IMG/VR virus record: IMGVR_UViG_3300034073_005389
Coordinates: 186,001-250,000 of that record
Reading direction: 5' to 3' (one strand)
Length of the DNA stretch: 64,000 nt
This document shows, piece after piece, positions 9,939-25,337 of this stretch (positions are counted from its first letter, which is position 1; each line of letters starts with the position of its first letter). Both the position numbers and the translations under genes were made by a program. Below the pieces are notes generated by a model that was not told where the DNA came from, searched no databases, and saw only the letters and a list, made by a program, of their open reading frames with translations.

Positions 9939-11402
9939 TTAATCCTTAGGTCTATATTGTCTAGTTATATGAGTTACTTTATCTCTAGTTTCTCTTTCTA
10001 ATATTCTTCTTCTTTCATCAGGAGAGGCTCCTGGATACAATATTTCATAATATTTACTTTTCATTTGCTTAATTTTATCGTCAATTAAAGCAAAATTACG
10101 AATTAATAAATCTGAATTAAATTCTTTTTCTAATGCATCCATGGATTCATCAATCAATGAATTGGCTTCATCGGATAATTGAATTAGCTCTACGCTAACA
10201 GCCACTCTTAAAGCTTCACTAGAATCTTCGGTGGTAAAGGTTGCTACTGATAATAAGTTATTAACTTTATTTTGATCGTCAAAAACATTATTTTCGTCTG
10301 GATTATTACTTAAATCCTCTTCGTCTTGTTGCTCTTCTTCTTTTGCTTTACTTTCTTCTACATTACGTTTAAGCCTCTCAAATGCATTAACTACGTTTTG
10401 AACTAAAACTTTGTCAGATTTATCATCAGCTTCACTAAATATGTTAATACTCTTAAGAAGTCTGTTATATAGTTTTCTTAATTCTAAGTTACTCAAACTA
10501 GGCGATAAAGCTCTAGCAAGATCGTCTATGTCATGGACAGTTTTTTTGTTTCTGTTTATAACAAGTTCTTTAACCTCATCAGGGGTGGGTTGATCGATAG
10601 GCGTAGATGAATCTTTGGAGGATGGTGCAGGGGCTGGCGTAGCGACTGGTGTAGCTGCTGGTGTAGCGGCAGGTTCTGTAGTAGGTGGTGGTTTTTCTTT
10701 TTCTTTTTTCTTATCTTGATCTGATTTAGGCTTTGCGGGCTCAGATTGTAAAGACTCTTTAATAGTTTCTAAAGAAACTCCTGAAGCAGCAGCAATTAAA
10801 TTAATTATTGAATTCCAATTTGACTCAATATTTAAAAATATTGATTTAGCATTTTTTACATCTTCTGTTGAAGGAGTGAATCTGTATAAATATCCTTTAC
10901 CTAATTTTCTTTCAAATTTCCTAATATCTCTATATAGTTGAAGCAAAGAATCTAATAAAGACATTCTATAGATGCGTTGCTTCCCGCCTTGCCCCCAACC
11001 AAAAGGACCAAAAGTAGGAGTAAGTAATTTAGTAAAAAATCTAGAAAAAATATTAGAAGCTTCAACAGTTAAAACTCCTTCATAATTTTCAATAGCTGCT
11101 GTTTTTTTCTTTTTTCTATTTTTAGAATAAGAGTCTTGCTCTTGTGTTATTTTTTCTGCTTTTTGAGCAATAGAGTTATACTTATTAGTTAAATTAGAAA
11201 TAATATCAACTGGATTACCAGGAATTGGTTCAATAATTTTAGATTTTTCTTGAAAAAAAACGCTAGGAGAGCCATTTATTAATTTTTTAAAATTAATAAC
11301 ATCATGAATTAATTCTGATACTTCTTTATTCCATTCTTGTTTATTCTGCCTTAGCTGTTCTTGAGCAGGATCAGAAGATGGTTTTCTAGCATATTTATTC
11401 AT
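9939..11402 (-). CDS. hypothetical protein with Pro/Ala/Thr linker and acidic tract (possible virion protein)
   Basis: 487-aa helical ORF; GAGG SD. Confidence 0.6.
   Translation of the reverse strand: MNKYARKPSSDPAQEQLRQNKQEWNKEVSELIHDVINFKKLINGSPSVFFQEKSKIIEPIPGNPVDIISNLTNKYNSIAQKAEKITQEQDSYSKNRKKKKTAAIENYEGVLTVEASNIFSRFFTKLLTPTFGPFGWGQGGKQRIYRMSLLDSLLQLYRDIRKFERKLGKGYLYRFTPSTEDVKNAKSIFLNIESNWNSIINLIAAASGVSLETIKESLQSEPAKPKSDQDKKKEKEKPPPTTEPAATPAATPVATPAPAPSSKDSSTPIDQPTPDEVKELVINRNKKTVHDIDDLARALSPSLSNLELRKLYNRLLKSINIFSEADDKSDKVLVQNVVNAFERLKRNVEESKAKEEEQQDEEDLSNNPDENNVFDDQNKVNNLLSVATFTTEDSSEALRVAVSVELIQLSDEANSLIDESMDALEKEFNSDLLIRNFALIDDKIKQMKSKYYEILYPGASPDERRRILERETRDKVTHITRQYRPKD
10636..10671. 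repeat. imperfect 12-bp tandem repeat x3 (coding AATP/VATP linker)
   Basis: ggcgtagcgact ggtgtagctgct ggtgtagcggca. Confidence 0.7.
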
Positions 11403-11429: not shown

Positions 11430-12017
11430 TCAGATAATCTGGTCAATTAAACCATACTGCAAAGCTTGCTTAGCATCCATCCAAACATCTTGCTTACAAT
11501 CTTCTTTTAGTTTTTCTAGTGGATGACCTGTATGCTGAGCTAAAATTTTCATAATATTATCATTATTTTCTTTAATAAAATCATAATAATTTTTTGAATT
11601 TATAATATCTTGACCTGGTAAAGGAAATGCGAACTGAATACCATGAATCATGATTTTGGATGACTTCATAGCATATCTTTCTCCTTTTGCTCCGGCAGCC
11701 AAAATAACTGCACCGGCAGAATAAGCTTTACCGGCACATATTGTTTTAACTGGAGCTGAAATCATCTGCATTACATCATAAATATTAGCTAATCCAGCGG
11801 CATCTCCACCATTTGAATGTATATAAATGGTAATTGGTTCTTCATGATTTTCGTTATCATAATAAAGTAATAAGGCAGCTAGTTCGGCAGCACTTTGTTT
11901 AGTAACATCTTCAGATAAGAAGATCATTCTATCTTTAGTTAATCTAATATATGTTTCTGCATACCCGGCTAATGGATTTTTAGCGGCATCATGATCTTGT
12001 AAAGAATGTTTCTTCAT
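11430..12017 (-). CDS. clpP: Clp protease proteolytic subunit, triad intact
   Basis: IHSNGG, KAYSAG (Ser), KIMIHG (His), QDVWM (Asp), YGLIDQI. Confidence 0.92.
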   Translation of the reverse strand: MKKHSLQDHDAAKNPLAGYAETYIRLTKDRMIFLSEDVTKQSAAELAALLLYYDNENHEEPITIYIHSNGGDAAGLANIYDVMQMISAPVKTICAGKAYSAGAVILAAGAKGERYAMKSSKIMIHGIQFAFPLPGQDIINSKNYYDFIKENNDNIMKILAQHTGHPLEKLKEDCKQDVWMDAKQALQYGLIDQII

Positions 12018-12023
12018 AAACCC

Positions 12024-12608
12024 TCATTTAGAAATAGAAATAACTTTGTCAATCAAACCATACTTTACAGCTTGATTTGCGTTCATAAACACTGTTCTTT
12101 CAAAATCTTCCATTACTTGTTTAAGTGGTTTATTACAAGATTTAGAAAAAATCTCCATCATTCTTTTGTTATCTGACATAGATTGGTCTAATATTTTCTT
12201 AGCGTCTGTTAAATTAGAATTAGAATACCAATCGTGTACTAATTGTCCTGCTGAAATAACAGAATTTTTAGTAGCGAATCTCATTCCAGGAGTTCCGCCT
12301 GCCAGAATAATAGCAGCCTCATCCATGGCAGAGCCAATACAAACAGTTTCAATAGGCGATTCAATCATAGACATGATATCATAAATCATTAATGCGTTAC
12401 GAATATCACCTCCATCAGAATTAATAAATAATGTAATTTTTTTAGAACAATCCTCTGCATCTTTTAGCAGAAGAGTTGCAACAATATCTGTGGCTAAATT
12501 ATCAGTAATTTGATTACATAAAAATAAAATTCTATCATTGGCTAATTTTTGATATACGTCAATAGCAATATCACCATTTTCGGTGTTTTCAATAACTAAT
12601 GTATTCAA
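12024..12608 (-). CDS. catalytically inactive ClpP paralog (ClpR-like)
   Basis: ClpP fold (DRILFL, INSDGGD, YGLIDKVI) but Ser->Asp (SAMDEA), His->Gly (ISAGQ), Asp->Thr (ERTVFM). Confidence 0.88.
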   Translation of the reverse strand: MNTLVIENTENGDIAIDVYQKLANDRILFLCNQITDNLATDIVATLLLKDAEDCSKKITLFINSDGGDIRNALMIYDIMSMIESPIETVCIGSAMDEAAIILAGGTPGMRFATKNSVISAGQLVHDWYSNSNLTDAKKILDQSMSDNKRMMEIFSKSCNKPLKQVMEDFERTVFMNANQAVKYGLIDKVISISK

Positions 12609-12964
12609 GGAATTGACCTCTTTCTTTGTTTTTCTTCTTTTTCTCTAATTTCTGCACATACTACACAAGTAGTAAAATATGGATTAATTTCTAATCTTTT
12701 ATGAGGAATTTCCTCTTCACAATCTTCACAAAGACCATAATTACAGTTATCAATTTTAGCAAGAGCCTCTTCAATTTTATTAATTTTATTCTTTTTAAGA
12801 ATAAGAAGTTGAGTGGCTGTGCCCATTAACATATTGCCTTGAATTTCATCGGTCTCATCTCCATCAATATCTACGCCGATATCATTCATAATTTGAGAAT
12901 ACAATATGTCTTTTTGAGACAATAAATCTTCTTTGATTTTTAAAATAAATTGCTTATTTAACAT
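12605..12964 (-). CDS. dksA: DksA/TraR C4 zinc-finger protein
   Basis: Coiled coil with DETD tip; YGLCEDCEEEIPHKRLEINPYFTTCVVC. Confidence 0.9.
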   Translation of the reverse strand: MLNKQFILKIKEDLLSQKDILYSQIMNDIGVDIDGDETDEIQGNMLMGTATQLLILKKNKINKIEEALAKIDNCNYGLCEDCEEEIPHKRLEINPYFTTCVVCAEIREKEEKQRKRSIP

Positions 12965-13329
12965 TATTCAAACCTTAAATCTATAATAGGTACAATGGTT
13001 GTGTTTTTATTAGAATCTTTGCTACTATTTAAATTTTTTAAAAAAACTAAAAATGCATGATTTTCTGGGCTTTCAAGAAAAAATGCATTCACTTTCCAAT
13101 CCTGATAAATAGCTGGTTTAATAATTCCATTAAATTTTAAATTTACAGGAGTAGGAGGAGCATGTACTTTTTTTCTTAAAAAAGGACCTTCTATTTGAGA
13201 GGGTATTAATCCATATTTTTGTTTATACATAGATACTGCTTCTTTTTCTGAAAGAGCAGTTATTGATTCCATCAATAATTTTTCTTGTACAATAGCGGCA
13301 CAAACATAAAAAATAGGTTTTTTACTCAC
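12964..13329 (-). CDS. hypothetical protein
   Basis: 121-aa ORF coupled to neighbours. Confidence 0.55.
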   Translation of the reverse strand: MSKKPIFYVCAAIVQEKLLMESITALSEKEAVSMYKQKYGLIPSQIEGPFLRKKVHAPPTPVNLKFNGIIKPAIYQDWKVNAFFLESPENHAFLVFLKNLNSSKDSNKNTTIVPIIDLRFE

Positions 13330-13684
13330 TATCCTTACCTATATTATTTTTAATCATCTTGTCAATATCCAAGAAACTTATTAATTTCTTTTTGAATTTA
13401 TTGGCAACTTTAAAAAATATTTTTCTTTTACTTCTAGTAATAAGATGTTTGTTTCTAAATTTAATAAAATATTTTCTAGGAGCAGTTCTTTTTACTCCAA
13501 AAATTCCTAGATTAATAATCTTAAATTCTTTATCTTGCCTAATATCTTTAGATAATTCATCAAATAATATTGCTATTACACTAAAAACATGATGATGATT
13601 AATTTTTCTTTTAATTTTTTTATTTACATATTTATACAGCGCAACCCTATCAATTTTTTTGATCATACTTTTGTCCTTGACCAT
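13322..13684 (-). CDS. HU/IHF-like DNA-binding protein, divergent
   Basis: VIAILFDELSKDIRQDKEFKIINLGIFGVKRTAPR...FFKV..KFKKKL. Confidence 0.7.
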   Translation of the reverse strand: MVKDKSMIKKIDRVALYKYVNKKIKRKINHHHVFSVIAILFDELSKDIRQDKEFKIINLGIFGVKRTAPRKYFIKFRNKHLITRSKRKIFFKVANKFKKKLISFLDIDKMIKNNIGKDSE

Positions 13685-14004
13685 AAGATCCTGCCTTTAC
13701 CAAAAGAAGGATCTAAATATTTTTTATAATTTTCGTGAACAATTTTCCTATTTTCAAACCTAGAAACAATTCTTGTTTTAAAGAAAACTGAATTATTTAG
13801 CAACTCATCTGAGATGATATATTTTTTGTGTTTATTTATACATTTTTCACATAAACCATTAAATATATTATCAGAAGCAAATAAATTATGGGGAGAGTTT
13901 TTTTCTATATATTTGCCGCAAAAAGTAGAATACTTTTTATCAAAATTAAATTTTAAATTAACAATATGTGGAAAGTCATTATTATCTGTAATAAAGCAAA
14001 ACAT
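13663..14004 (-). CDS. hypothetical protein
   Basis: 113-aa ORF with H..TFCG..C..C. Confidence 0.5.
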   Translation of the reverse strand: MFCFITDNNDFPHIVNLKFNFDKKYSTFCGKYIEKNSPHNLFASDNIFNGLCEKCINKHKKYIISDELLNNSVFFKTRIVSRFENRKIVHENYKKYLDPSFGKGRILWSRTKV

Positions 14005-14490
14005 TTATACCTCTTGCAACAAGATTCTCTCAAAGTCTTGAAAGAACTCTCCTGGAGATAGGGTTTGATTATGACTATAAATCACTTTTTCATCAATTAA
14101 TTGCTTAATGCAAAAAATAACATCTTCTGTATTAATAGATTCAAATTGCAAAGAAGAAATACAAATACTTTCATTTTTTACTTTACTAAGTATTTTTTGA
14201 CAAATATGATGATTATTTATCTTAAATAAAGATAATGTTTTAGAAAAATCTTGAAAAGATTTATTTGATTTATCTAAGGAAGAAACTACTCCTAATAATT
14301 TACATCTAATTTTTTTTAGCTTTTCTACTTCTATAATTTTAGAATCTATTTCAGATATTTGATTTTTTGCAAAATCAACTATTTCATCTATAGAAAAAAT
14401 GTTATTTTTAACACAATCAGAAATAAATTGATTTAAAAAATCAACATCACTTTTTTTACCTTTAGTTTGATTCCTCATAATAATTGCCAT
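14005..14490 (-). CDS. hypothetical coiled-coil protein
   Basis: Track ORF 14005..14562 trimmed to a plausible ATG (14490 or 14478) to remove the long overlap. Confidence 0.55.
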   Translation of the reverse strand: MAIIMRNQTKGKKSDVDFLNQFISDCVKNNIFSIDEIVDFAKNQISEIDSKIIEVEKLKKIRCKLLGVVSSLDKSNKSFQDFSKTLSLFKINNHHICQKILSKVKNESICISSLQFESINTEDVIFCIKQLIDEKVIYSHNQTLSPGEFFQDFERILLQEV

Positions 14491-14995
14491 GATATTTAAT
14501 AAAACTAAGTAAATTAGCAAAATCTTGAGTATAATCCTTACATTTTTCCCAACTAAATCCAACTTGTTTTACATTTTCCATAGCAGCCAAAAAAGTAGCT
14601 TGTAAATAAATATTACAAGGCAACCACTTTTGGTTATCTACTGTTACAGCTACTAATGGTTGAGGATCAATTTCAAACTTAGAAGAATACTCTAAATAAA
14701 TTCCATATGCGGGATTATTTTGCATATGGACTAAGACAGCATAACCTAACACGCCATCTTCAGTAGAGCAATCAGCCGCCAAAATTTTTAAATATTCTCC
14801 TTCAATAAAAAATTGAGTTCCCCAAACTTTATTTTTTAAATTTGTATCTTCTATGTCAAAATTAACTGTTTCTGGTAAAAGATATTTTTTATTATTTAAA
14901 TTTTCAAATTTATTTAAATCTATATTTTGATTAGGAGATAACCCTAACCCAGAAAAAATATGATCAATAATTTCAATTGTTAATTTTTTATTCAT
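14462..14995 (-). CDS. hypothetical protein
   Basis: 177-aa ORF, ATGA overlap with upstream gene. Confidence 0.6.
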   Translation of the reverse strand: MNKKLTIEIIDHIFSGLGLSPNQNIDLNKFENLNNKKYLLPETVNFDIEDTNLKNKVWGTQFFIEGEYLKILAADCSTEDGVLGYAVLVHMQNNPAYGIYLEYSSKFEIDPQPLVAVTVDNQKWLPCNIYLQATFLAAMENVKQVGFSWEKCKDYTQDFANLLSFIKYHGNYYEESN

Positions 14996-15264
14996 CTAAA
15001 TTTTCCCAATCTAATATTAGACATTAAAGATCTAATATCTACAGGTTGTAGATTAATTTCTGGTAATTCTAATAATGATTTTTCAATATAAGATTCATAG
15101 TCAAAATTATCGCCATTTTCTCTTCTTTTACCCAATTCTTGCATACAAAGAGTCGCTAGCTCTTTATAAGAATTTAAATATCTATAGCAAACAATTATTT
15201 GACATAATTTTTCACTACTAAATGTAGGTATTTTATTTTTTGTTTCTTCTAATAAATCAATCAT
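14992..15264 (-). CDS. hypothetical protein
   Basis: 90-aa ORF, ATGA overlaps. Confidence 0.55.
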   Translation of the reverse strand: MIDLLEETKNKIPTFSSEKLCQIIVCYRYLNSYKELATLCMQELGKRRENGDNFDYESYIEKSLLELPEINLQPVDIRSLMSNIRLGKFR

Positions 15265-15605
15265 GCAGGAAGCCTCACTAGCCAGCTAGGAGAAGAAATA
15301 AATGGTCTGACACGGACATATTTTTTAGGTTTGGTAATTTTTATTCTTAAATTATTAAAAAGACCGGAAACCGTTACAATTTCTCCTCTGATTAAAAATT
15401 CTCTTATACTTTCAAATGTAGCGTTTATTATAACAGCTATTTCTGTTTTAGATACCAATGGATATCTGGCATGAATTCTTTCTATTAAATCTTCTCCTTT
15501 ATCAAACTTAATAGGATATTGTTTATTTATGGCAGAGATTACCTCATCGAATGTTGTGTTATTTAAGATAACAGAATAATTATTAAAATGTTTTATTCTT
15601 TCCAT
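15261..15605 (-). CDS. HU/IHF-like DNA-binding protein, second divergent copy
   Basis: LIERIHARYPLVSKTEIAVIINATFESIREFLIRGEIVTVSGLF matches the HU helices and first strand; arm shortened. Confidence 0.7.
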   Translation of the reverse strand: MERIKHFNNYSVILNNTTFDEVISAINKQYPIKFDKGEDLIERIHARYPLVSKTEIAVIINATFESIREFLIRGEIVTVSGLFNNLRIKITKPKKYVRVRPFISSPSWLVRLPA

Positions 15606-15700
15606 ATTGAAATTTTCCCTATAGTATAAAGCATACCTTCTCCTATAATATATATCCTCACATTTTGTCGAGAGATGATGTTTGGTGAAGGTTAGATATA

Positions 15701-16297
15701 TTGCCTCGTATGGGCTGCGTCAATTTTAATAAAATTAAAAAAGCTTTAATAATTGGTCCTATTTATGATCAATTAGATAAATTACAAAAAATTAAAAATA
15801 TGTCAGAAAATTATGATATTACTATAATTAATGGTAGCATTTGCCATATTTTAAATAATAATCAAAAAAATAGAATTGAAAATTTTGAAAAAATTTTAAA
15901 TAAAAAAATTTATTATTTAGCTAGTGACTTAGACTATGTGTCTATGATGGAAGATGATTTTATCAAAAACTGGCTGTTAGATAAACCAAATGTAGCAAAA
16001 ATAAAATTTAATTCCGGGGTACCAGTATTGATCATGTCAGGAGGCATACCGTCTCAATTAGGTCGCTTTGGCATAGAATCAAATTTAGAAATTTCTTTCG
16101 TCACGAACCAGGGCGAGGTAGCCTGGCACCACAAATACAACGGTATGGCTGGCTACGTAATTTCTAACAATCCCTTGTCAGATGCCCCTCCAGAGTTTTT
16201 TAACTATTCAGCTAGAATAGGAATTAATTACAATAAAAATAAAATTTATTGTCAAGAAATAGAAGAATATGGATTAAAAAATACTATTTTGTTATAG
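15701..16297 (+). CDS. degenerate calcineurin-like metallophosphoesterase (ApaH/PrpA-like fold, metal ligands lost)
   Basis: IGPIYD, INGSIC, LASDLD, MSGGIP, W...Y.G..GYVISNNP align by eye to GDIHG, GD, GNHE, HAG, GH motifs. Confidence 0.55.
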   Translation: MPRMGCVNFNKIKKALIIGPIYDQLDKLQKIKNMSENYDITIINGSICHILNNNQKNRIENFEKILNKKIYYLASDLDYVSMMEDDFIKNWLLDKPNVAKIKFNSGVPVLIMSGGIPSQLGRFGIESNLEISFVTNQGEVAWHHKYNGMAGYVISNNPLSDAPPEFFNYSARIGINYNKNKIYCQEIEEYGLKNTILL

Positions 16298-16341
16298 TAA
16301 TAATAATATATTTAGTAGTAAATATTTTTTAAGAGGTTTTT

Positions 16342-17043
16342 ATGGATAAATGTTGTAAGGCAGCCGCATTATATATTGCTTCATTAAAAGGATTATCTTT
16401 AATCCATCAACACAGTCATTGGACTGCTAGAGGCAGCTCTTTTTACGGAAAGCATTTGTTATTTGAAAGAATTTATGAGTCTGCTTTAGAAAATTTAGAT
16501 TTAGCAGCTGAAAAATTTATTGGCGTTTTTGGTCTAGAATGCATTGACTATGAAATGCAATCTGATTTTCTAAAAAAAGTTTTAGATAGGTTTTCTAAAT
16601 ATGAAGGCGAACCAATCGAAATGTCTTTAATGGTAGAAAAAGAATTTTTAGAATATTCTGAATATGCTTATAATTGCTTTGAAGAAGAAGATAAGCTAAC
16701 TTTAGGAATTGATGACATGATTATGTCAATCGCCAGCGAGCGCGAAGAAGCCGTTTATTTATTACAACAATCTTTAGAAGGAAAAATTTCCTTAGAAAAA
16801 GACGATGAAGAAGGTATCGAAGAAGAGGAAGAGGAGCAGGAAGAGGAGCAGGAAGAAGAGGAGGAAGAGGAAGAAGAGGAAGAGGAAGAAGAGGAGGAGG
16901 AATATCAGCCCTCTCCTATGGATGTAGGGATGTTAGATGAATTTGGGACTGACCTTGACCCTATTGACTTTGACCTAGATGATGATGATCTTAATGATGA
17001 TCTAGATTTAGATGAAGATGAAGATAATATCTTTAATTTTTAA
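16342..17043 (+). CDS. ferritin/Dps-like four-helix protein with long acidic C-terminal tail
   Basis: HQHSHWTARGSSFYGKHLLFERIYE...D..AE is the Dps-like pattern; tail is E/D-rich. Confidence 0.75.
   Translation: MDKCCKAAALYIASLKGLSLIHQHSHWTARGSSFYGKHLLFERIYESALENLDLAAEKFIGVFGLECIDYEMQSDFLKKVLDRFSKYEGEPIEMSLMVEKEFLEYSEYAYNCFEEEDKLTLGIDDMIMSIASEREEAVYLLQQSLEGKISLEKDDEEGIEEEEEEQEEEQEEEEEEEEEEEEEEEEEYQPSPMDVGMLDEFGTDLDPIDFDLDDDDLNDDLDLDEDEDNIFNF
16819..16902 (+). repeat. GAA/GAG low-complexity tract encoding a 28-residue Glu run with two Gln
   Basis: Purine-rich repeat directly visible. Confidence 0.9.
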
Positions 17044-17065
17044 AGAAAAATAGCTAATATAGTAA

Positions 17066-17100
17066 AAACCCCGCTATAAACAAGCGGGGTTTCTATTTTT
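17066..17100. terminator. bidirectional intrinsic terminator
   Basis: aaaccccgct-ataaaca-agcggggttt 10-bp stem with A/T tracts on both sides, between convergent genes. Confidence 0.85.
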
Positions 17101-17410
17101 TATATTTTTGAGAAAATTTGTCAATTTCTCTATATTGTAGAGCCATAGATAATGCTTCGTAAACATTAATATTATCTTTTAATGATAAATTAGTTAATGT
17201 TAAAAGTATTTCTCCAAAAGTTCTTACTTTAATTTTATTTTTTTCTTCTTCTGGTAATGTTTTATTACTCAACATTGAGTATAAATTTGTCTTTAAGTCT
17301 AGTTCTTGAATAATAGATTCAAGATGATCTTGAGAAGAAAACTCTTTATGAAAAGACTCGCATTTTTCCCATAAATCTTCAAAATGAAGAAATTTATTTT
17401 TCATAATCAA
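17093..17410 (-). CDS. MazG-like (all-alpha NTP pyrophosphohydrolase fold) protein, degenerate
   Basis: FGEILLTLTNLSLKDNINVYEAL resembles ExGDxLxxLxxLA..xIDLEEAL. Confidence 0.45.
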   Translation of the reverse strand: MIMKNKFLHFEDLWEKCESFHKEFSSQDHLESIIQELDLKTNLYSMLSNKTLPEEEKNKIKVRTFGEILLTLTNLSLKDNINVYEALSMALQYREIDKFSQKYKK

Positions 17411-17601
17411 TCATCCATATCTTTATTATCCATCACTGCAATTTGCAATTGTTCTTCTCCTTTGTCAGAGACGAAAACAAGAAAAACAGCTCCAGGATAA
17501 CAATCAATAAGCACAGGTGCTTTAATTTTACCAACATAAAAAGTTTGACCGTCTACATCTTTGCGAGCTTTTAAATCAATTACAATATTCTTATTAGACA
17601 T
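17407..17601 (-). CDS. hypothetical protein
   Basis: 64-aa beta-rich ORF, GGAG SD. Confidence 0.55.
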   Translation of the reverse strand: MSNKNIVIDLKARKDVDGQTFYVGKIKAPVLIDCYPGAVFLVFVSDKGEEQLQIAVMDNKDMDD

Positions 17602-17603
17602 AA

Positions 17604-18464
17604 TTAAAATCTCCGAATTCCAATATTATTAAAATAATTTGCCATACATTGTGTTAAAGCTTCTTGTGTTGGCGTCATCAAGAAACCTGTTTGTCTTAAT
17701 TTTAAACAATCTAAAATACAGTTTGACCTAGTAGCTTGAGTTAGCTCCGCTAGCTCGTCTTCTGAGATAATTTCAAATTGATGAAGCGGTATGTATTTCT
17801 GATACTCGTTCATAATCTCTACAGCTGTTAATGGTTCTGGATTAGTTACATGAAATATTCCAGTATAATTATTACTTATCAAGTGATCAATACATCTGAT
17901 TAAATCAGAAATAAATGTAACAGAATTTTTAATATCAATTATTTTAGAATAAGTTTTTAACTTATTAATTAAATTTCTAGGATGATTTTTTTCAGAAATA
18001 GGCATCCTAATACGAAGCGTAGTGACGTTTGGCAAATCTCCAATTAACAAATCACAAGCATATTTTGTTTTTGAATAAAATGATTTTGGATTAGCAGCAT
18101 CTCTTTCTCTCCATCCATAATCGTAAGAAACTTGTTGATTTAATACTGATTTATCAACACGAGGAGATGGTCCATAAAAAATGCAACCAGAGTTAATTTG
18201 AACTAAATGTATAGATTGTTTATTACACTCTTGTGCCAAAAGTGTTGGAATGGTGACATTACTAATTAATGTGGCTTCTTGATTGTTCTCGCACCAGTCA
18301 ATATTAGGTCTTCCTGTTTTGCCAATACAAGAAACAATTACATCGGGCTTATAAATATCAATAAAATTTTGTACAGATCTTGTATTTGGCTCTAAATACA
18401 CATTTGGTTTATCATAAGATAAATGTTCTGCAATAAAACCATTACCTAATACACAAATTTTCAT
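17604..18464 (-). CDS. NDP-4-keto-6-deoxyglucose 3,5-epimerase/4-reductase (NRS/ER, RmlD-like; NDP-L-rhamnose synthesis)
   Basis: LGNGFIA, GKTGRPNIDWCE, SGCIF, SFYSKTK (YxxxK), LRIRMPI, KNSVT. Confidence 0.85.
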   Translation of the reverse strand: MKICVLGNGFIAEHLSYDKPNVYLEPNTRSVQNFIDIYKPDVIVSCIGKTGRPNIDWCENNQEATLISNVTIPTLLAQECNKQSIHLVQINSGCIFYGPSPRVDKSVLNQQVSYDYGWRERDAANPKSFYSKTKYACDLLIGDLPNVTTLRIRMPISEKNHPRNLINKLKTYSKIIDIKNSVTFISDLIRCIDHLISNNYTGIFHVTNPEPLTAVEIMNEYQKYIPLHQFEIISEDELAELTQATRSNCILDCLKLRQTGFLMTPTQEALTQCMANYFNNIGIRRF

Positions 18465-18724
18465 AATTGACTCTCAAACACATCATAAAATCGTTTGCCC
18501 ATATATTTCTCTGGTATTTCTAAATGTAAAATATGAAAATCGTTAATGGTCCAACCAATCATATTGTCATGAATAATAACTGTATAGTATTGTAGTTTTG
18601 TATTTTTTGCTACAATAATAAATTCATCTTCAAAATATTCATTTTTATTAAGCTTATCTTTTTTAAGATAAATTTTATTTTTATGTACTTTTAAAGTGAT
18701 TTTGTCTCCAACTTTATATTTCAT
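18461..18724 (-). CDS. hypothetical protein
   Basis: 87-aa ORF in operon. Confidence 0.5.
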   Translation of the reverse strand: MKYKVGDKITLKVHKNKIYLKKDKLNKNEYFEDEFIIVAKNTKLQYYTVIIHDNMIGWTINDFHILHLEIPEKYMGKRFYDVFESQL

Positions 18725-19439
18725 ATTTATTGTAATAATAATTGTTTACATAAGCAATAGATTGATGGGTCCCAGCATCATTCCACAACCCATCTATAAA
18801 AGTATAATCTAAATTTTGTTGAATATTATATAAATTAATAATATCGGTTATTTCATATTCATTTCTAGAACTAGGATTAATTTTTTTAAAAAAATCAAAA
18901 AATTGACAGTCAAACAAATAGCATCCAGTTATGGCATAATTATTATATTCTAAAGAAATTTTTTTTGGTTTTTCTTCAATTTTTATAATTTTATTATTTT
19001 GTATAGATGCCACTCCAAATCTATTTAATTCCGGGTGGTTATGCAAAACAATTTGAGATTTTGCATTAGAATTTTTCTTCCAAATAATAGGATTTTCAAA
19101 AATATTATCTCCTAATATAACCACAAAATTAGATTGTTGCGCTACATAAGACTGACATAATGAGATGGCTTGAGCGATCCCTTGCGGCTTGTGCTGATAA
19201 ACATAATTAAAATTTAGTTCATATTGACTGCCATCTTTTAAATGATCTACTACTTGTGAAAAGTGATTACCACCTAATACTACAGTAATGTTTTTGATAC
19301 CCATTGTTTTTAATGTTTTTATGGGATAATCAATAATAAACTGACCGTGCACTCCAAGCAAGTGCTTGTTTACAACATAAGTTAAAGGGTATAATCTAGA
19401 GCCAGTTCCACCGGCTAATAAAATTGCGTGGTCTATCAT
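18714..19439 (-). CDS. rmlA: glucose-1-phosphate thymidylyltransferase-like sugar nucleotidyltransferase
   Basis: AILLAGGTGSRLYPLT..NKHLL, Q.KPQGIAQAI, ILGDNIF, EEKP, RNEYEITD, WNDAGT. Confidence 0.85.
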   Translation of the reverse strand: MIDHAILLAGGTGSRLYPLTYVVNKHLLGVHGQFIIDYPIKTLKTMGIKNITVVLGGNHFSQVVDHLKDGSQYELNFNYVYQHKPQGIAQAISLCQSYVAQQSNFVVILGDNIFENPIIWKKNSNAKSQIVLHNHPELNRFGVASIQNNKIIKIEEKPKKISLEYNNYAITGCYLFDCQFFDFFKKINPSSRNEYEITDIINLYNIQQNLDYTFIDGLWNDAGTHQSIAYVNNYYYNKYEI

Positions 19440-19443
19440 AAAA

Positions 19444-19980
19444 TTATTTAGAAGGAGATACTGTCATCGACATAAATTTTCCATCTACATTAATAGGAGC
19501 ATCTGTTTGAATTAATGAACCTAATTCTTTAATTATCCAAAAAAGTTTGTCTTGCGCAACTTGTGGATGAGCTAATTCTCTGCCCCTAAATCTAACAGTA
19601 AATTTTACTTTATGACCATCTTTAATAAATTCTTTCGCTGATGCTAGCTTGTGATTTAAATCATTTAAATCAGTAGATGGTCTAAAAGTAATTTCTTTTA
19701 CTTCTTGAGTTTTTTGCTTTTTTCTGATTTCCGAAAGCCGCTTCTTCTCTTCATATTTAAATTTACCATAATTGTAAATTTTACATACTGGAGGAGATGA
19801 TTTAGGATTAATTTCGACTAAATCTAATCCTTGATCTTGAGCCAATTTAAGAGCATCGCGAGTAGGCATTACGCCTACTGATGCTCCATCTTGGTCAATT
19901 ACTCGAACTTGTGGTACTTTAATTTGATAATTAACTCGAACTCTAGATTGTGAATTTTGTTTTTGTGGCTGTGCTTCCAT
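19444..19980 (-). CDS. infC: translation initiation factor IF-3
   Basis: VRVIDQDG, GLDLVEIN, PPVCKI, KEITFRP, GHKVKFTVRFRGRE. Confidence 0.97.
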   Translation of the reverse strand: MEAQPQKQNSQSRVRVNYQIKVPQVRVIDQDGASVGVMPTRDALKLAQDQGLDLVEINPKSSPPVCKIYNYGKFKYEEKKRLSEIRKKQKTQEVKEITFRPSTDLNDLNHKLASAKEFIKDGHKVKFTVRFRGRELAHPQVAQDKLFWIIKELGSLIQTDAPINVDGKFMSMTVSPSK

Positions 19981-19996
19981 TTATAATTTCCAAAAA

Positions 19997-20455
19997 TTAT
20001 TTGTGATTTATACCGTAAACAGACAAATATGAAACATCTATTTTCCAGATTTTACTGGATCTAGTTGACCAATCTAAAAAACAATTTTTTATATAGTCTC
20101 TAGCTTCTTGTTCAGAAACTTTATTTATTTTAATAAAGTGCTTTAAAGCTTTGTTAAATTTTCCATTAGCTTCTGCCAAGCCGATATGCTTAACCATATG
20201 GCAGTTGGGGCATAATGCAAGTAACTTGGTCAATTTTTGTATTGATTTTTGATCATCAAATTCAAAAATTTCATGACATTCAACCGGATGCTTTCTGCCC
20301 TTCCCGCCACAAATCTCACATTTATAATCAGCTTGTCTATAAACTTGCTTTCTAACATTATCCCATTCTTTAGAAGAAAGAATAGACCTAACGTTTGAAA
20401 ACCAAGAAGAAGATGGAATTAATTCAATAGTTAATTTGTAATTCATTACAATCAA
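19997..20455 (-). CDS. HNH endonuclease-like protein
   Basis: WDNVRK..YKCEICG, ECHE, LCPNCHMVKH. Confidence 0.8.
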   Translation of the reverse strand: MIVMNYKLTIELIPSSSWFSNVRSILSSKEWDNVRKQVYRQADYKCEICGGKGRKHPVECHEIFEFDDQKSIQKLTKLLALCPNCHMVKHIGLAEANGKFNKALKHFIKINKVSEQEARDYIKNCFLDWSTRSSKIWKIDVSYLSVYGINHK

Positions 20456-20469
20456 TGATTATTATATCA

Positions 20470-21024
20470 TCAATTAAAAATTAATAAGGTCTTAATAAAT
20501 TTATTTAAATTTTTAATATTTTTAAATTTATTTAAATTTATTTTGGGCAAGCTAATAGCTAAGCCGCTATAATGAATAAATGTAGAATCAGTAGTCGCTC
20601 TATAAGTATTATTAATATATAATTTTTTATTGTCTAAAGTAGAAATCAATTCTTCTGAACAAAGAAGAGTTTTAGGAAAAAAACTATTATCAATTAATTT
20701 ATTTTCAATAAATCCAAAATCTATTCTAAAATTGCATGTAGAACATTTTAGATAAAAAGATAAATAATTAGAAATCATTTCTTCTATATAATTAGATCCT
20801 TTTAAGACTTCATTTGTTAAAATATTAATTTTAAATGGAAAATTCTTGTTGCAAGAAATAAGAAAGCAATCTTTTATTTTTGTTTTGCAATATACAGCCG
20901 AATTTGGATAAAAAGAATATTTATCCTTGACACCGGCAATATAAAAATGAAGACTTTTTTTACAAATTATACAATTAGAAATATAATTGTAACAATCAGA
21001 GATTGATGCAAAAGCAGTTTGCAT
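20470..21024 (-). CDS. Zn-ribbon paralog family member 1 (hypothetical)
   Basis: Y..CIIC, CSTC, C-terminal LPKINL...IKTLLIFN shared with 49729, 51044, 54416. Confidence 0.65.
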   Translation of the reverse strand: MQTAFASISDCYNYISNCIICKKSLHFYIAGVKDKYSFYPNSAVYCKTKIKDCFLISCNKNFPFKINILTNEVLKGSNYIEEMISNYLSFYLKCSTCNFRIDFGFIENKLIDNSFFPKTLLCSEELISTLDNKKLYINNTYRATTDSTFIHYSGLAISLPKINLNKFKNIKNLNKFIKTLLIFN

Positions 21025-21035
21025 AATAATTTTTA

Positions 21036-21731
21036 TTATAATGCAGCAATTAAATCTAAAATATCTTTACGAATCCCCTCTGAGGGATCTACTTTGTAAG
21101 TAATAGAATTATTACTGGCAAATGACTCAATGGCATTTTTGGTTCCTGGACCATAAAGCCCATCAATTTTTTTAGTATAAAGTTTTATTTTAGATAAATT
21201 AGTCTGAACTTGAATTAAAAGATCTTTAGTAAATGAGACGTATGAGACTAAGTTTTCTTTTTGATCCATGGGTCTCATAAAAAGCTCGCCTTCTGATATG
21301 CGACGATTTAACAATCCTTGAAGGACAGTTGAAACGCCATTTACTTTAGCTTTCGACCAATCTTTTAGGCGTTTAGGAACATCAGAAAACCGCTTCTCGT
21401 TAACTGCACGTTGAACTCCTGTATTACGTAATCCGCCTTCTCCAACATTAAAGACGAAACTAACAAGAGCATCAAATTGATTTTGATTTAACTCAATTGT
21501 TATTGATCGGTTAACTGCTCTTTCAAATCTTTCCACATCTTTACTAAGCAATTCCATAGCCATTTTTTCTGTAATTACATCTGGTATATTTTCACTAGGC
21601 AAAATTACATGACCTACTCCAATAGTAGGCTTACCAGCAGGACATATATACCTATTTAGTTTTAGTCCCTCCCAACGAGTAATTAAAGCCAATCCATTAG
21701 GTGATGTTTTCATGTTATTAATTGTCGTCAT
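21036..21731 (-). CDS. GH24 phage lysozyme (endolysin) with C-terminal peptidoglycan-binding domain
   Basis: LITRWEG (catalytic Glu), TIGVGH, NQNQFDALVSFVFNVG, GLLNRR..E; DGLYGPGTKNAI..F PG_binding_1-like. Confidence 0.92.
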   Translation of the reverse strand: MTTINNMKTSPNGLALITRWEGLKLNRYICPAGKPTIGVGHVILPSENIPDVITEKMAMELLSKDVERFERAVNRSITIELNQNQFDALVSFVFNVGEGGLRNTGVQRAVNEKRFSDVPKRLKDWSKAKVNGVSTVLQGLLNRRISEGELFMRPMDQKENLVSYVSFTKDLLIQVQTNLSKIKLYTKKIDGLYGPGTKNAIESFASNNSITYKVDPSEGIRKDILDLIAAL

Positions 21732-21748
21732 AATGTTGCCTTATTAGA

Positions 21749-22102
21749 TGGTGGAGAATTGGGGAGTCGAACCCCATTCCGCAGAATATTATTATGTAAA
21801 CTCATTCACAAACTTAGCCAGTTTTACATCTCTAGCGATGTCAATAGATTTAGCTCTATTAAGCGATTCACTGTTGTTTTTATTATTAACCTCGTGACCT
21901 GATTAATAACTAACCTTGGTGGTTAAGTGTCTGTAGAATACTAAGGTTATCTCTTCTCAGACACCCAATCAGGCAGCTAGTGCCATTGGAGCAAATGCAT
22001 TATCGTTGGCATTTAAACGTCGATTGCTGGATTAACGGAATGGCAATCATTTCCTGTTTGCATTTACACAACTCTAAACCACGTCGAAACCAAGTATTCC
22101 CC
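21749..22102 (-). ncRNA. ssrA: tmRNA (transfer-messenger RNA), 354 nt
   Basis: Acceptor stem GGGGAAT/ATTCTCC-A-CCA with G3.U wobble, GGTTTCGAC D-region, T-arm TGGGG-TTCGACT-CCCCA, internal tag ORF, encoded CCA. Confidence 0.96.
21969..22010 (-). other. tmRNA tag reading frame ANDNAFAPMALAA*
   Basis: TTTAAAT then GCC AAC GAT AAT GCA TTT GCT CCA ATG GCA CTA GCT GCC TGA. Confidence 0.93.
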
Positions 22103-22181
22103 GAAAGCTACCGATGAGATTTTCACTCATATCTCCTAAATACAATAAAGGGCGTTCATATTACGCTACGGTAGCATATAT

Positions 22182-22209
22182 AGCTTATATTTTATAAATA
22201 GCATGTCAA
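22182..22209 (-). promoter_or_regulatory. sigma70-like promoter TTGACA-N16-TAAGCT (tmRNA precursor)
   Basis: ttgaca tgctatttataaaata taagct on the minus strand. Confidence 0.75.
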
Positions 22210-22364
22210 GATCAAGTTATTTTTTAACTTTGGAGGTCAAATGCCAGCCTTGGCAAGAATCACACTTATAAGTGGTTAGGTTAATTAAATTATGATGTGC
22301 AATAATTGCGTCAGCATCTTTTTTAGTATTATATCTTTTTTTATTTGGAAACTCTAAACATTTT

Positions 22365-23147
22365 TTATGTGGCACGGAATAAATCATGTCCTAATCTAAA
22401 AATATTTAATAAAAAAGATTGTTCCTTAGTAAAGATAGGCAAATCATAATTTATAATCCATTTATTTTTCATATTTTCTCCTATTAATTTAGGAGATCGA
22501 TAACAAGCCGCACCTCTTCTAAAAACAGGATGATACTGATTAAAATCAATATTGCATTCTTGCGCTAACAATTCTATTTTTTCTTCAAAAGTTAATCCTT
22601 GAATCATCTCTTTAATAGAATTTTTATCATATTTTTTAATTAACTCATAAAAACAAGCCAATTGAATAGAGGTGTAAAAATTTTGTTGTTGCTTAAATAT
22701 AATAGTATTAACGGCTTCTGAAATAGAAGGTACATTAAAAACTCTAGAATGAAAGTGAGATTCGCCCAATAAATTTAAATCAGAGTTTTCAATATTCTTA
22801 TTGAATTCTAAAGTGGCTATAGAACTAGTGATAGAAGTTAATTTTTGAACTTTATTATCCAGCCAAGGACTAGTATCTGCAGATTGATCATTTCTAGCCA
22901 CAATTACAATTTCATCATTGTGATGATAAGCAAAAATAGCCCCCTCAATTTCAGAACATAATTTTAAGGCAGTGGTTAGCATATATTCTGAAAATTTTTC
23001 AGAATAAGGCTTATCTAATATAGATGTAGTCTTATTAAATGACCTACCATTAACTACTATAATTATTGGTAATTTATTTAATAGTTTCGCATCAGATTGG
23101 TCTTGATAAGAATCAATCCGATCTTTTAATTTAAGATTATTCATCAC
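22365..23147 (-). CDS. tRNA-His guanylyltransferase Thg1-like protein, first catalytic Asp replaced
   Basis: VVNGRSF (vs RxDGxxF), YHHNDEI, WLDNKVQK..S..SS.AT..FN, FHSRVF. Confidence 0.8.
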   Translation of the reverse strand: MMNNLKLKDRIDSYQDQSDAKLLNKLPIIIVVNGRSFNKTTSILDKPYSEKFSEYMLTTALKLCSEIEGAIFAYHHNDEIVIVARNDQSADTSPWLDNKVQKLTSITSSIATLEFNKNIENSDLNLLGESHFHSRVFNVPSISEAVNTIIFKQQQNFYTSIQLACFYELIKKYDKNSIKEMIQGLTFEEKIELLAQECNIDFNQYHPVFRRGAACYRSPKLIGENMKNKWIINYDLPIFTKEQSFLLNIFRLGHDLFRAT

Positions 23148-23799: not shown

Positions 23800-24393
23800 A
23801 TGATTACTTTTATTATACCTACAATAAATAGAAATACTTTAAATAGATCAATTGATTGTTTATTATCTCAATATAACCCAAATTGGAAAGCAATTGTAGC
23901 TTTTGATGGTTTACCTGCCTTACATTTTCCAGACCCTAGAATTACTTCAATTAGTGTGCCTAAAACAGGAAAATTGAACCATGCAGGTAATGTAAGAAAT
24001 ATTGCTATTTCCAAAGCTGATACAGACTGGGTAGCTTTTCTTGATGATGATGATACTATTTCTAATGATTATGTAGATAGGTTAGTAGAAGAAACAAAAG
24101 AAAATCCAGAAGCTAAATGTATTATATTTAGAATGAAAACCTCATTTGACCCCGTTGGTATTTTACCAGAACCAAATCATAATACATTTTATAAGTGCAG
24201 GGTAGGGATTAGTTTTGCAATAAAAAAAGAAATAAATATAAACTTTGAACCATCTCACATAGAAGACTTTATTATTTTAAATAAAATAAGAGAAAATGGT
24301 CATAAAATAATTATTTCTCCTTATGTTACTTACTTTGTAAGAGAAAATCCTTGCCCAATGCCAGCCTTTAAAAGAGTTAAAATTAACTATTAA
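23800..24393 (+). CDS. GT2-like glycosyltransferase (GT-A fold)
   Basis: FIIPTINR..L.RSIDCL..Q, GNVRNIAI, WVAFLDDDD, EDF. Confidence 0.85.
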   Translation: MITFIIPTINRNTLNRSIDCLLSQYNPNWKAIVAFDGLPALHFPDPRITSISVPKTGKLNHAGNVRNIAISKADTDWVAFLDDDDTISNDYVDRLVEETKENPEAKCIIFRMKTSFDPVGILPEPNHNTFYKCRVGISFAIKKEININFEPSHIEDFIILNKIRENGHKIIISPYVTYFVRENPCPMPAFKRVKINY

Positions 24394-25331: not shown

Positions 25332-25337
25332 AATATT

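What the first reader, a model, noticed from the sequence alone, without database searches (positions are those of the whole stretch)
12024..23147. Cluster of intact-ORF pseudoenzymes derived from stress and nucleotide-handling families
Seen within ~11 kb: ClpR-like (triad lost), metallophosphoesterase-like (ligands lost), MazG-like (acidic motif eroded), Thg1-like (Asp->Asn) and a DksA tip variant. All are full-length with no frameshifts. Known: phages use ligand-sponge and decoy proteins against nucleotide-signalling immunity. Inference: a repeated strategy of turning host enzymes into binders or decoys.
Basis: inference. Interest (0 to 1): 0.6.

Follow-up and report, generated by a model that had tools for sequence, protein, structure and literature searches.

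The report
Catalytically degenerate enzyme homologues in huge phage
A 361-kb phage carries, inside a conserved block of host-like housekeeping genes, three well-conserved proteins that keep an enzyme's fold but have lost its catalytic residues (a ClpP paralogue, a Thg1-like protein, a phosphoesterase-like protein); they look like separate inventions, not one coordinated decoy island.

Summary
The window lies in a 361,490-bp IMG/VR virus record with about 30% GC.

- **ClpR-like (12024-12608):** it lacks all three triad residues. In 26 of 26 related huge-phage loci it sits directly beside a ClpP that keeps them.
- **Thg1-like (22365-23147):** it has Asn at the first metal-binding Asp. This holds in 120 of 120 close homologues and 43 of 43 loci, and most other catalytic residues are replaced too. 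Thg1-like proteins of cultured phages keep all of them.
- **Phosphoesterase-like (15701-16297):** two independent models give the metallophosphoesterase fold. None of its 12 family members has the metal-binding motifs.
- **MazG-like (17093-17410):** the assignment is only weakly supported. The protein belongs to a large conserved family without a Pfam or PDB match.
- **DksA-like:** it keeps both tip aspartates and is not an enzyme, so it does not belong on the list.

All of these genes are under purifying selection (dN/dS 0.09-0.27), so the substitutions are lineage-wide features and not decay. The "pseudoenzyme" observation is therefore largely right.

The "repeated decoy or sponge strategy" reading is untested and unnecessary for ClpR, which most simply is the non-catalytic partner of a ClpP/ClpR protease. 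The degenerate genes are scattered among intact enzymes, and I could not show that they are enriched here.

The parts
11430..12017 (-). ClpP with an intact Ser-His-Asp triad and a diverged N-terminus; the catalytic partner of the ClpR-like gene.
   Evidence: PF00574 E 9e-51. It aligns to solved ClpPs only from residue 21, with S100, H125 and D177 in register. S-H-D/E is kept in all 26 related loci.
12024..12608 (-). ClpR-like ClpP paralogue with all three triad residues replaced (Asp, Gly, Thr). It keeps the canonical N-terminal axial-loop sequence.
   Evidence: PF00574 E 4e-47. The alignment to 2zl0 covers residues 4-191. Triad loss is seen in 26 of 26 loci, always directly upstream of ClpP. 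dN/dS is 0.11 against L007.
12605..12964 (-). DksA/TraR-family C4 zinc-finger protein with both tip aspartates kept and Ala->Ile at the third motif position. It is not a pseudoenzyme.
   Evidence: PF01258 E 8e-10 and phrog_54. Alignments to 4ijj and 1tjl. The sequence DGDETDEIQGN is invariant in three relatives.
15701..16297 (+). Compact protein of 198 aa with a metallophosphoesterase fold and none of the dinuclear-metal ligands.
   Evidence: AF2 pLDDT 85.6. Foldseek matches PP5, lambda PP and PP1 at E about 1e-6. ESM Atlas structure neighbours are Metallophos clusters. There is no canonical motif, and H143 is the only conserved His. dN/dS is 0.27.
16342..17043 (+). Dps-like mini-ferritin with its ferroxidase residues kept and a tail of about 80 aa made of Glu and Asp. 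It probably shares a transcript with the phosphoesterase-like gene.
   Evidence: phrog_3636. It matches PDB Dps/MrgA at E 5e-5, with H, H, D and E aligned. The + strand pair is conserved in L006 and L007.
17093..17410 (-). Four-helix protein of 105 aa from a large conserved family of unknown function. Its MazG-like status is unproven.
   Evidence: 177 word-search hits and 243 representative clusters. F10, W14, E18 and G66 are near-invariant. There is no Pfam or PDB match. ESM Atlas neighbours are MazG clusters. dN/dS is 0.089.
21749..22102 (-). Phage tmRNA with the tag ANDNAFAPMALAA, 263 bp downstream of the Thg1-like gene.
   Evidence: ARAGORN and Rfam RF00023 at 114 bits. A tmRNA lies within 4 kb downstream of the Thg1-like gene in 13 of 43 Asn-clade loci.
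22365..23147 (-). Thg1-like protein of the 'Asn clade'. D30->N, R28->V, E12->Q, S74->N and the WRQxD..N motif is lost. K43, D75 and E76 are kept.
   Evidence: PF04446 E 1e-20 and PF14413; 4kgk E 2e-22. Invariance is shown, the comparison with cultured-phage proteins, and the tree. dN/dS is 0.154.

Best explanation
The region is part of a syntenic block of host-like housekeeping genes. The block holds ClpP/ClpR, a DksA-like protein, two HU-like proteins, a Dps-like protein, dTDP-sugar enzymes, IF3, a tmRNA and a Thg1-like protein, and it is shared by a clade of uncultured huge phages.

Within it, three proteins are shown to be conserved homologues of enzymes that lack the canonical catalytic residues. 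I take them to be independent neofunctionalisations, not one strategy.

1. ClpR-like. It is the non-catalytic subunit of a phage ClpP/ClpR protease. Because ClpR keeps the canonical N-terminal axial loop and ClpP does not, I infer that ClpR supplies gating and unfoldase docking while ClpP supplies the active sites. The complex would use a host Clp ATPase, since the phage has none of the ClpX/ClpA type.
2. Thg1-like 'Asn clade'. It has lost the two-metal site and the residues that hold the incoming NTP, but it has gained new invariant polar residues. I infer that it no longer performs 3'-5' nucleotide addition and instead binds an RNA 5' end (tRNA-like) or a nucleotide.
3. Phosphoesterase-like protein. 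It cannot hold a dinuclear metal centre. Its most conserved residues sit where the old motifs were, so I infer a ligand-binding or protein-binding pocket.

The 105-aa helical protein is a conserved family of unknown function, and the DksA-like protein is probably a working RNA-polymerase secondary-channel factor.

Shown: the residue states, their conservation, the folds, purifying selection and synteny. Inferred: every functional statement.
For: - Identity and synteny.
- ClpR: triad loss; 26 of 26 tandem ClpR-ClpP pairs; N-terminal coverage from residue 4 in ClpR against residue 21 in ClpP; no AAA_2 family ATPase in the genome.
- Thg1-like: N33 in 120 of 120 proteins. The 13-residue signature ERDKSDEDRWRDN is present in five cultured-phage proteins, while 43 of 43 Asn-clade loci show xxNK(N/S)DE.... 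Residue roles come from PMC3701042. The tree needs one change. It is the only Thg1 homologue in the genome. New invariant residues include R85-N86-D87-Q88 and Q153-Q154-N156.
- Phosphoesterase-like. Two canonical Metallophos genes lie elsewhere in the genome.
- Purifying selection.
- DksA-like.
Against: - No biochemical data exist, and loss of canonical residues does not prove loss of all catalysis.
- The Thg1-like clade has new invariant acidic residues (D19, D87) that could rebuild a metal site.
- My equivalences for the phosphoesterase ligands come from the order of strands and motifs in the model, not from a residue-level structural superposition.
- The ClpP-ClpR interaction test gave no verdict.
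- The ClpR tandem could also be read as two separate homo-oligomers.
- Enrichment of degenerate enzymes over the genome's background was not measured.
- At 60-80% identity to L007, dS is near saturation, so those dN/dS values are rough.
Confidence: 0.55

Rival explanations
1. The degenerate proteins are a coordinated set of ligand sponges or decoys that neutralise nucleotide-signalling or stress-linked host immunity, for example by sequestering cyclic oligonucleotides, Ap4A, ppGpp or NTP-derived signals.
For: - The proteins are conserved, intact and under purifying selection although the catalytic residues are lost.
- In the phosphoesterase-like protein the former active-site positions are among its most conserved residues, as expected for a retained pocket.
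- The palm-domain and phosphoesterase folds are nucleotide-handling folds (established knowledge).
Against: - ClpR is fully explained by its obligate pairing with ClpP.
- The DksA-like protein is not degenerate, and the MazG link is unproven.
- The genes differ greatly in distribution and are separated by intact enzymes.
- The block looks like translation, proteostasis and nucleoid housekeeping, not an anti-defence island.
- No ligand binding has been shown.
Confidence: 0.12
2. One or more of the proteins are still enzymes with a rebuilt or different active site. The Thg1-like clade might use Asn33, Asp78 and a newly fixed acid such as D87 for one-metal chemistry. The 105-aa helical family might use its conserved E18, E36 and E67.
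For: - Conservation is very strong: 75% mean column identity in the Thg1-like clade and an invariant E18 in 137 of 137 helical-family members.
- New invariant polar and acidic residues are absent from canonical Thg1-like proteins.
- K43, D75 and E76 are retained.
Against: - Ten of 13 residues important for Thg1-like catalysis are replaced together, including both arginines and the glutamate that hold the incoming NTP.
- The phosphoesterase-like family has a single conserved histidine.
- The ClpR position equivalent to the catalytic His is not even conserved among relatives: it is G, S, N or T.
Confidence: 0.2
3. The ClpP/ClpR pair is a capsid-maturation protease with an inactive scaffold-like partner, not a cytoplasmic ATP-dependent protease.
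For: Both proteins hit PHROG 'head maturation protease' families: phrog_94 at E 6e-29 for ClpP and 2e-12 for ClpR.
Against: - Matches to cellular ClpP are stronger and full-length (Pfam E 1e-47 to 1e-51; PDB E 1e-35 to 1e-37).
- The PHROG matches cover only part of much longer profiles.
- The genes sit among DksA-like, HU-like, IF3 and tmRNA genes, not head genes.
- Phage G carries a cellular-type ClpP with a ClpX (PMC12484599).
Confidence: 0.08

Closest known systems
ClpR subunits of cyanobacterial and plastid ClpP/R proteases (and, for the ring logic, mycobacterial ClpP1P2)
   Same: It is a full-length ClpP paralogue without the Ser-His-Asp triad, encoded next to an active ClpP and kept over a long evolutionary span.
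   Different: It is phage-encoded and only about 36% identical to its partner. It shows no long ClpR-type insertion relative to ClpP, only a 2-residue gap in the alignment. I recall that insertion from the plastid literature and did not test for it here. Here the catalytic partner is the one with the diverged N-terminus. Orthology with cellular ClpR was not tested, and an independent duplication is likely.
Bacterial and phage Thg1-like proteins, e.g. the B. thuringiensis protein (PDB 4kgk)
   Same: The same two Pfam domains match along the whole length. K43, D75 and E76 are retained.
   Different: D30, R28, E12, S74, D129 and the WRQxD..N motif are all replaced, and R131 is replaced in most clade members. 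The clade is about 30% identical to canonical phage proteins and 60-75% identical within itself.
Inactive metallophosphoesterase-fold proteins such as Vps29 or the B subunits of DNA polymerases alpha and epsilon (from my own knowledge)
   Same: It has the calcineurin-like fold without a metal centre, and I presume it serves as a binding module.
   Different: It has no detectable sequence relation to them. It is a 198-aa stand-alone phage protein whose nearest folds are PPP-type phosphatases and lambda phosphatase.
Small phage MazG / all-alpha NTP pyrophosphohydrolases
   Same: The size, the four-helix architecture and a weak similarity over helices 3-4 ('GEILLTLTNLSLKDNINVYEAL' against 'EIADIVLRVFHLAETENIDIEKAL'). 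The ESM Atlas neighbours are MazG clusters.
   Different: No HMM or solved-structure match reaches significance. The ExxE...ExxD acidic set is not present as such.
DksA/TraR secondary-channel factors
   Same: It has the C4 zinc finger and the DxxD tip at the canonical spacing.
   Different: It is shorter, at 119 aa, and Ile replaces the motif's Ala.

Membership tests
ClpP (peptidase S14) | Match to the CLP_protease profile over the full length | tested here: met
   Both genes match: E 4e-47 and 9e-51.
ClpP (peptidase S14) | Ser-His-Asp catalytic triad | tested here: not met
   This row refers to 12024-12608, where the residues are Asp, Gly and Thr. The triad is met in the neighbour 11430-12017.
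ClpR (non-catalytic ClpP paralogue) | Triad lost, yet the protein is conserved and paired with an active ClpP | tested here: met
   26 of 26 related loci; dN/dS 0.11.
ClpR (non-catalytic ClpP paralogue) | Physical co-assembly with ClpP, and orthology to cellular ClpR | tested here: inconclusive
   Complex prediction gave no verdict. No tree with cellular ClpR was built.
Thg1 / Thg1-like proteins | Thg1 and Thg1C domains | tested here: met
   PF04446 at 74 bits and PF14413 at 27 bits; phrog_4717.
Thg1 / Thg1-like proteins | Three conserved carboxylates (D30, D75 and E76 in B. thuringiensis numbering) | tested here: not met
   D30 is Asn in every clade member, while D75 and E76 are kept (residue roles).
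Thg1 / Thg1-like proteins | Residues that hold the incoming NTP (E12, R28, R131) and activation residues (K43, S74, Asn of the WRQxD..N motif) | tested here: not met
   Only K43 is kept clade-wide.
Calcineurin-like metallophosphoesterases | The alpha/beta sandwich fold | tested here: met
   Foldseek probability 1.0 and TM 0.54-0.64; ESM Atlas TM 0.65-0.71.
Calcineurin-like metallophosphoesterases | The five metal-binding motifs (DxH, GDxxDR, GNHE, H, GH) | tested here: not met
   All are absent in 12 of 12 members. There is no PF00149 hit.
MazG / all-alpha NTP pyrophosphohydrolases | Profile or fold match | tested here: inconclusive
   No Pfam or PDB match. hhalign E 0.006-0.04. ESM Atlas neighbours are MazG clusters.
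MazG / all-alpha NTP pyrophosphohydrolases | The ExxE...ExxD metal-binding acids | tested here: not met
   Only E18, E36 and E67 are conserved, and they are not in the canonical pattern.
DksA/TraR | C4 zinc finger and the acidic tip DxxDxA | tested here: met
   PF01258. D36 and D39 are in register, and only the Ala is changed, to Ile.

The most novel reading that the evidence does not exclude
The Asn clade of phage Thg1-like proteins was found in more than 500 word-search hits and in at least 43 IMG/VR contigs, often a short distance upstream of a phage tmRNA. It may be a new functional class derived from a reverse polymerase: a non-polymerising factor that recognises the 5' end of tRNA-like RNAs (tRNA or the tmRNA tRNA-like domain), or senses a nucleotide, during host takeover. 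Together with a phage ClpP/ClpR protease and a phage tmRNA, it could form a phage-run ribosome-rescue and tagging-degradation pathway.
Probability: 0.15. Interest if true: 0.75.

Novelty: new variant of a known kind. Interest (0 to 1): 0.5.

Why it matters
Pseudoenzymes are well studied in eukaryotes but hardly at all in phages. Three points stand out.

- I found no paper describing a phage-encoded ClpP/ClpR pair. Its N-terminal asymmetry suggests a simple model for how a virus plugs its own protease core into the host unfoldase.
- The Thg1-like Asn clade is large, strongly conserved and stripped of the chemistry that defines the family. It is a clean and testable case of a reverse polymerase turned into something else.
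- The work also corrects the record. Automatic annotation names these proteins 'tRNA(His) guanylyltransferase', which is probably wrong for this clade.

Tried and rejected
- **Complex prediction, ClpP with ClpR:** no verdict. It is not evidence either way.
- **The look-up of sequencing runs for environment and expression:** No reads were laid.
- **Sequence and profile searches of the PDB** for the phosphoesterase-like and MazG-like proteins: only chance-level hits.
- **hhalign of the phosphoesterase-like family against lambda phosphatase:** nothing. No residue-level ligand mapping by sequence is therefore possible. My mapping uses the order of strands and motifs in the model and is an inference.
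- **Fold searches for the MazG-like model** with Foldseek PDB, VIA-align wide and BFVD: only generic helical bundles. DCTPP1, RS21-C6 and AF1178 appear at E 0.6-1.3 among cytochrome b562 designs.
- **Pfam on 31 close and 50 distant members of the MazG-like family:** no MazG hit.
- **Nucleotide megablast of the region against cultured phages:** only a 50-bp lysozyme match. **tblastn of the MazG-like protein against cultured phages:** none.
- **ORF 9939-11402, next to ClpP, considered as a possible unfoldase:** rejected. It has no Pfam or PHROG hit, no Walker A motif and is low-complexity.
- **Enrichment statistics:** not attempted, because no genome-wide census of catalytic residues was feasible.
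- **The careful maximum-likelihood tree did not finish.** The quick tree is the one reported.

Full report
**Where the window lies**

The window is bases 186001-250000 of a single 361,490-bp IMG/VR virus record rated 97% complete. Its GC content is about 30%. Nucleotide search finds no cultured relative.

The flagged 11 kb is a run of tightly packed ORFs, mostly on the - strand. Read in the direction of transcription, Pfam, PHROG and RNA scans give this order:

- a family-2 glycosyltransferase (on the + strand) and an unknown ORF;
- the Thg1-like protein (22365-23147) and a 56-aa zinc-ribbon-like ORF;
- a tmRNA (21749-22102, tag ANDNAFAPMALAA);
- a lysozyme, an unknown ORF and an HNH endonuclease;
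- IF3, RmlA, an 87-aa ORF, RmlD and a 64-aa ORF;
- the 105-aa 'MazG-like' ORF (17093-17410);
- on the + strand, the phosphoesterase-like ORF (15701-16297) and a Dps-like ORF (16342-17043);
- then an HU-like protein, four unknown ORFs, a second HU-like protein and another unknown ORF;
- a DksA/TraR zinc-finger protein (12605-12964), the ClpR-like gene (12024-12608), ClpP (11430-12017) and a 487-aa low-complexity ORF.

The whole order is conserved in three relatives fetched here: L006 (78-100% protein identity), L007 and L003.

**ClpR-like gene**

- Against H. pylori ClpP the alignment runs from residue 4 to residue 191. It puts Asp at the catalytic Ser, Gly at the His and Thr at the Asp.
- The neighbouring ClpP keeps S100, H125 and D177.
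- In 26 further huge-phage contigs (43-480 kb) found with a ClpR alignment, every locus has the same tandem. The ClpR has D/A/N/H, then S/N/T/G, then R/V/Q/T at the three positions. A ClpP with S-H-D or S-H-E follows directly.
- The two paralogues are about 36% identical to each other, while ClpR orthologues are 57-80% identical.
- ClpR keeps the canonical N-terminal axial-loop sequence, but ClpP aligns to solved ClpPs only from residue 21.
- The genome has no ClpX/ClpA-type ATPase.

The simplest reading is a heteromeric ClpP/ClpR core that uses a host unfoldase, with ClpR contributing the gate and docking face. This is an inference, and the interaction test gave no verdict. A capsid-protease reading is weaker. 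I found no paper describing a phage ClpR. Phage G is reported to carry ClpP with ClpX (PMC12484599).

**Thg1-like gene**

The closest solved structure is the B. thuringiensis Thg1-like protein (4kgk, E 2e-22). The structure paper (PMC3701042) assigns the roles of its residues:

- D30 and D75 bind the two Mg ions.
- E76 packs on R28.
- E12, R28 and R131 hold the incoming NTP.
- K43, S74 and an Asn serve the activation step.

The window protein has Q15, V31, N33, K46, N77, D78, E79 and R135 at those positions, and FKQQQ..T in place of WRQxD..N. The pattern across relatives is as follows.

- N33 is invariant in the 120 closest database proteins.
- In 80 IMG/VR loci, 43 of 43 clade members (46-68% identical to the window protein) have Asn. 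They lack R28, D129 and the W/R/D/N residues, and mostly R131 too. They keep only K43, D75 and E76.
- Five cultured-phage proteins and several metagenomic ones show the full canonical signature ERDKSDEDRWRDN.
- A quick maximum-likelihood tree needs a single change of the Asp/Asn label.
- The clade has its own new invariant residues, such as RNDQ at 85-88 and QQxN at 153-156.
- dN/dS is 0.15.
- It is the only Thg1 homologue in the genome.

This is therefore a derived, strongly constrained lineage that has lost the family's two-metal site. It is either a non-catalytic RNA or nucleotide binder, or an enzyme with a rebuilt site. A tmRNA lies within 4 kb downstream in 13 of 43 clade loci and in none of the 37 others. 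That may be no more than shared ancestry of the gene order.

**Phosphoesterase-like gene**

- Sequence methods find nothing.
- Twelve homologues exist.
- An AF2 model built on their alignment (pLDDT 85.6, pTM 0.86) matches PP5, lambda phosphatase, PP1, PP2A and calcineurin at Foldseek E about 1e-6 and probability 1.0.
- The independent ESM Atlas model matches Metallophos clusters at TM 0.65-0.71.
- No member has a DxH, GDxxDR or GNHE motif, and only one His is conserved. A dinuclear centre is therefore impossible.
- Going by strand order in the model, the old motif positions read G-P-I-Y22, N44-G45, (S/N/G/D)-G114-G115 and S155-N156-N157-P158. Several of these are invariant, so the former active-site face is still constrained. 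This mapping is an inference.
- dN/dS is 0.27.
- The gene is absent from the syntenic relative L003.
- Two canonical Metallophos genes lie elsewhere in the genome, one of them at 54966-55775.

**'MazG-like' gene**

- It belongs to a large family: 177 word-search hits and 243 representative clusters.
- F10, W14, E18 and G66 are near-invariant, and dN/dS is 0.089.
- No Pfam family matches any of the 81 members scanned. No PDB profile hit was found.
- Fold searches with a mediocre model (pLDDT 75.5) return generic bundles.
- hhalign to a canonical 95-aa phage MazG reaches only E 0.006-0.04 over helices 3-4.
- The ESM Atlas neighbours, both by features and by structure, are mostly MazG, MazG-like and PRA-PH clusters.
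- The genome has no canonical MazG.

I treat the MazG link as a lead, not a finding.

**DksA-like gene**

D36 and D39 align with D71 and D74 of E. coli DksA, with the same 40-residue spacing to the first Cys. The four Cys are present, and only Ala76 is changed, to Ile. This protein is not an enzyme and is not degenerate.

**Selection and clustering**

Nei-Gojobori dN/dS against L006 or L007 puts the degenerate genes at 0.09-0.27. That range matches RmlA at 0.10, RmlD at 0.17 and IF3 at 0.075. dS against L007 is near saturation, so those values are rough.

The degenerate genes lie at about 12.0, 15.7, 17.1 and 22.4 kb, separated by apparently intact enzymes. The Dps-like protein keeps its ferroxidase residues.

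A rough sum of my own: three or four degenerate proteins out of about eleven with enzyme folds is more than a 10% background would predict. The numbers are too small, and the background rate is assumed rather than measured, so I make no claim of enrichment.

**Verdict**

The substitutions are lineage-wide and selected.

The unifying decoy or sponge interpretation is not supported by anything testable here, and it is unnecessary for ClpR. It stays open for the Thg1-like and phosphoesterase-like proteins.

The most interesting pieces are the conserved phage ClpP/ClpR pair and the large Thg1-like clade that has lost its defining chemistry.

Noticed in passing
window 21749-22102 (-): A phage-encoded one-piece tmRNA with the tag ANDNAFAPMALAA (ARAGORN, and Rfam at 114 bits). 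Its tag ends in ALAA, like the E. coli ssrA tag that ClpXP recognises (my own knowledge), so it could feed the phage ClpP/ClpR core through a host ClpX.
   Followed up: partly
window 16342-17043 (+): A Dps-like protein that keeps the ferroxidase His, His, Asp and Glu but carries a C-terminal tail of about 80 aa made almost entirely of Glu and Asp. From my own knowledge, E. coli Dps binds DNA through a basic tail, so this one is unusual; it may be a DNA mimic or a partner of the two HU-like proteins nearby.
   Followed up: partly
window 17407-17601 (-): A 64-aa ORF of unknown function is the most conserved gene of the block: 100% protein identity to L006, 91% to L007 and 78% to L003, with dN/dS of 0. 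Its stop overlaps the start of the 105-aa 'MazG-like' ORF, which suggests translational coupling.
   Followed up: no
L098-L127 (IMG/VR, mostly sample 3300045988): A third variant of the Thg1-like protein. It keeps D30, S74, D75, E76 and WRQxD..N but has K, Q, A and C at E12, R28, D129 and R131. So the residues that hold the incoming NTP are lost while the metal site is kept.
   Followed up: no
window 17604-19439 and 24390-26327: Sugar-nucleotide genes lie beside a family-2 glycosyltransferase: RmlA, RmlD, an epimerase and a 4,6-dehydratase with a strong PF16363 match. The phage probably makes a dTDP- or GDP-deoxyhexose. No RmlC was seen.
   Followed up: no
window 19997-20455 (-): An HNH endonuclease (phrog_5200, E 2e-59) sits between IF3 and the next ORF. 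It is absent at this place in relative L007, so it looks like a mobile insertion.
   Followed up: partly
window 19444-19980 (-); 13322-13684 and 15261-15605 (-): A full-length translation initiation factor IF3 with both domains, and two divergent HU-like DNA-binding proteins. These are more host-like takeover genes in the same block.
   Followed up: no
window 2775-4121 (-): A classical AAA ATPase (PF00004, 448 aa) lies about 8 kb from ClpP/ClpR. It is the only candidate I saw for a phage-encoded unfoldase, but it is not of the ClpX/ClpA type.
   Followed up: no
window 14005-14562 / 14462-14995 (-): The listed TTG start of the 185-aa ORF overlaps the upstream ORF by 100 bp. The orthologue in L006 is called at 157 aa, so the true start is probably further downstream.
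   Followed up: no
whole record (G000): IMG/VR labels this 361-kb, 97%-complete record a 'provirus'. The window shows no bacterial flank, so the label may be an artefact of the many host-like genes.
   Followed up: no
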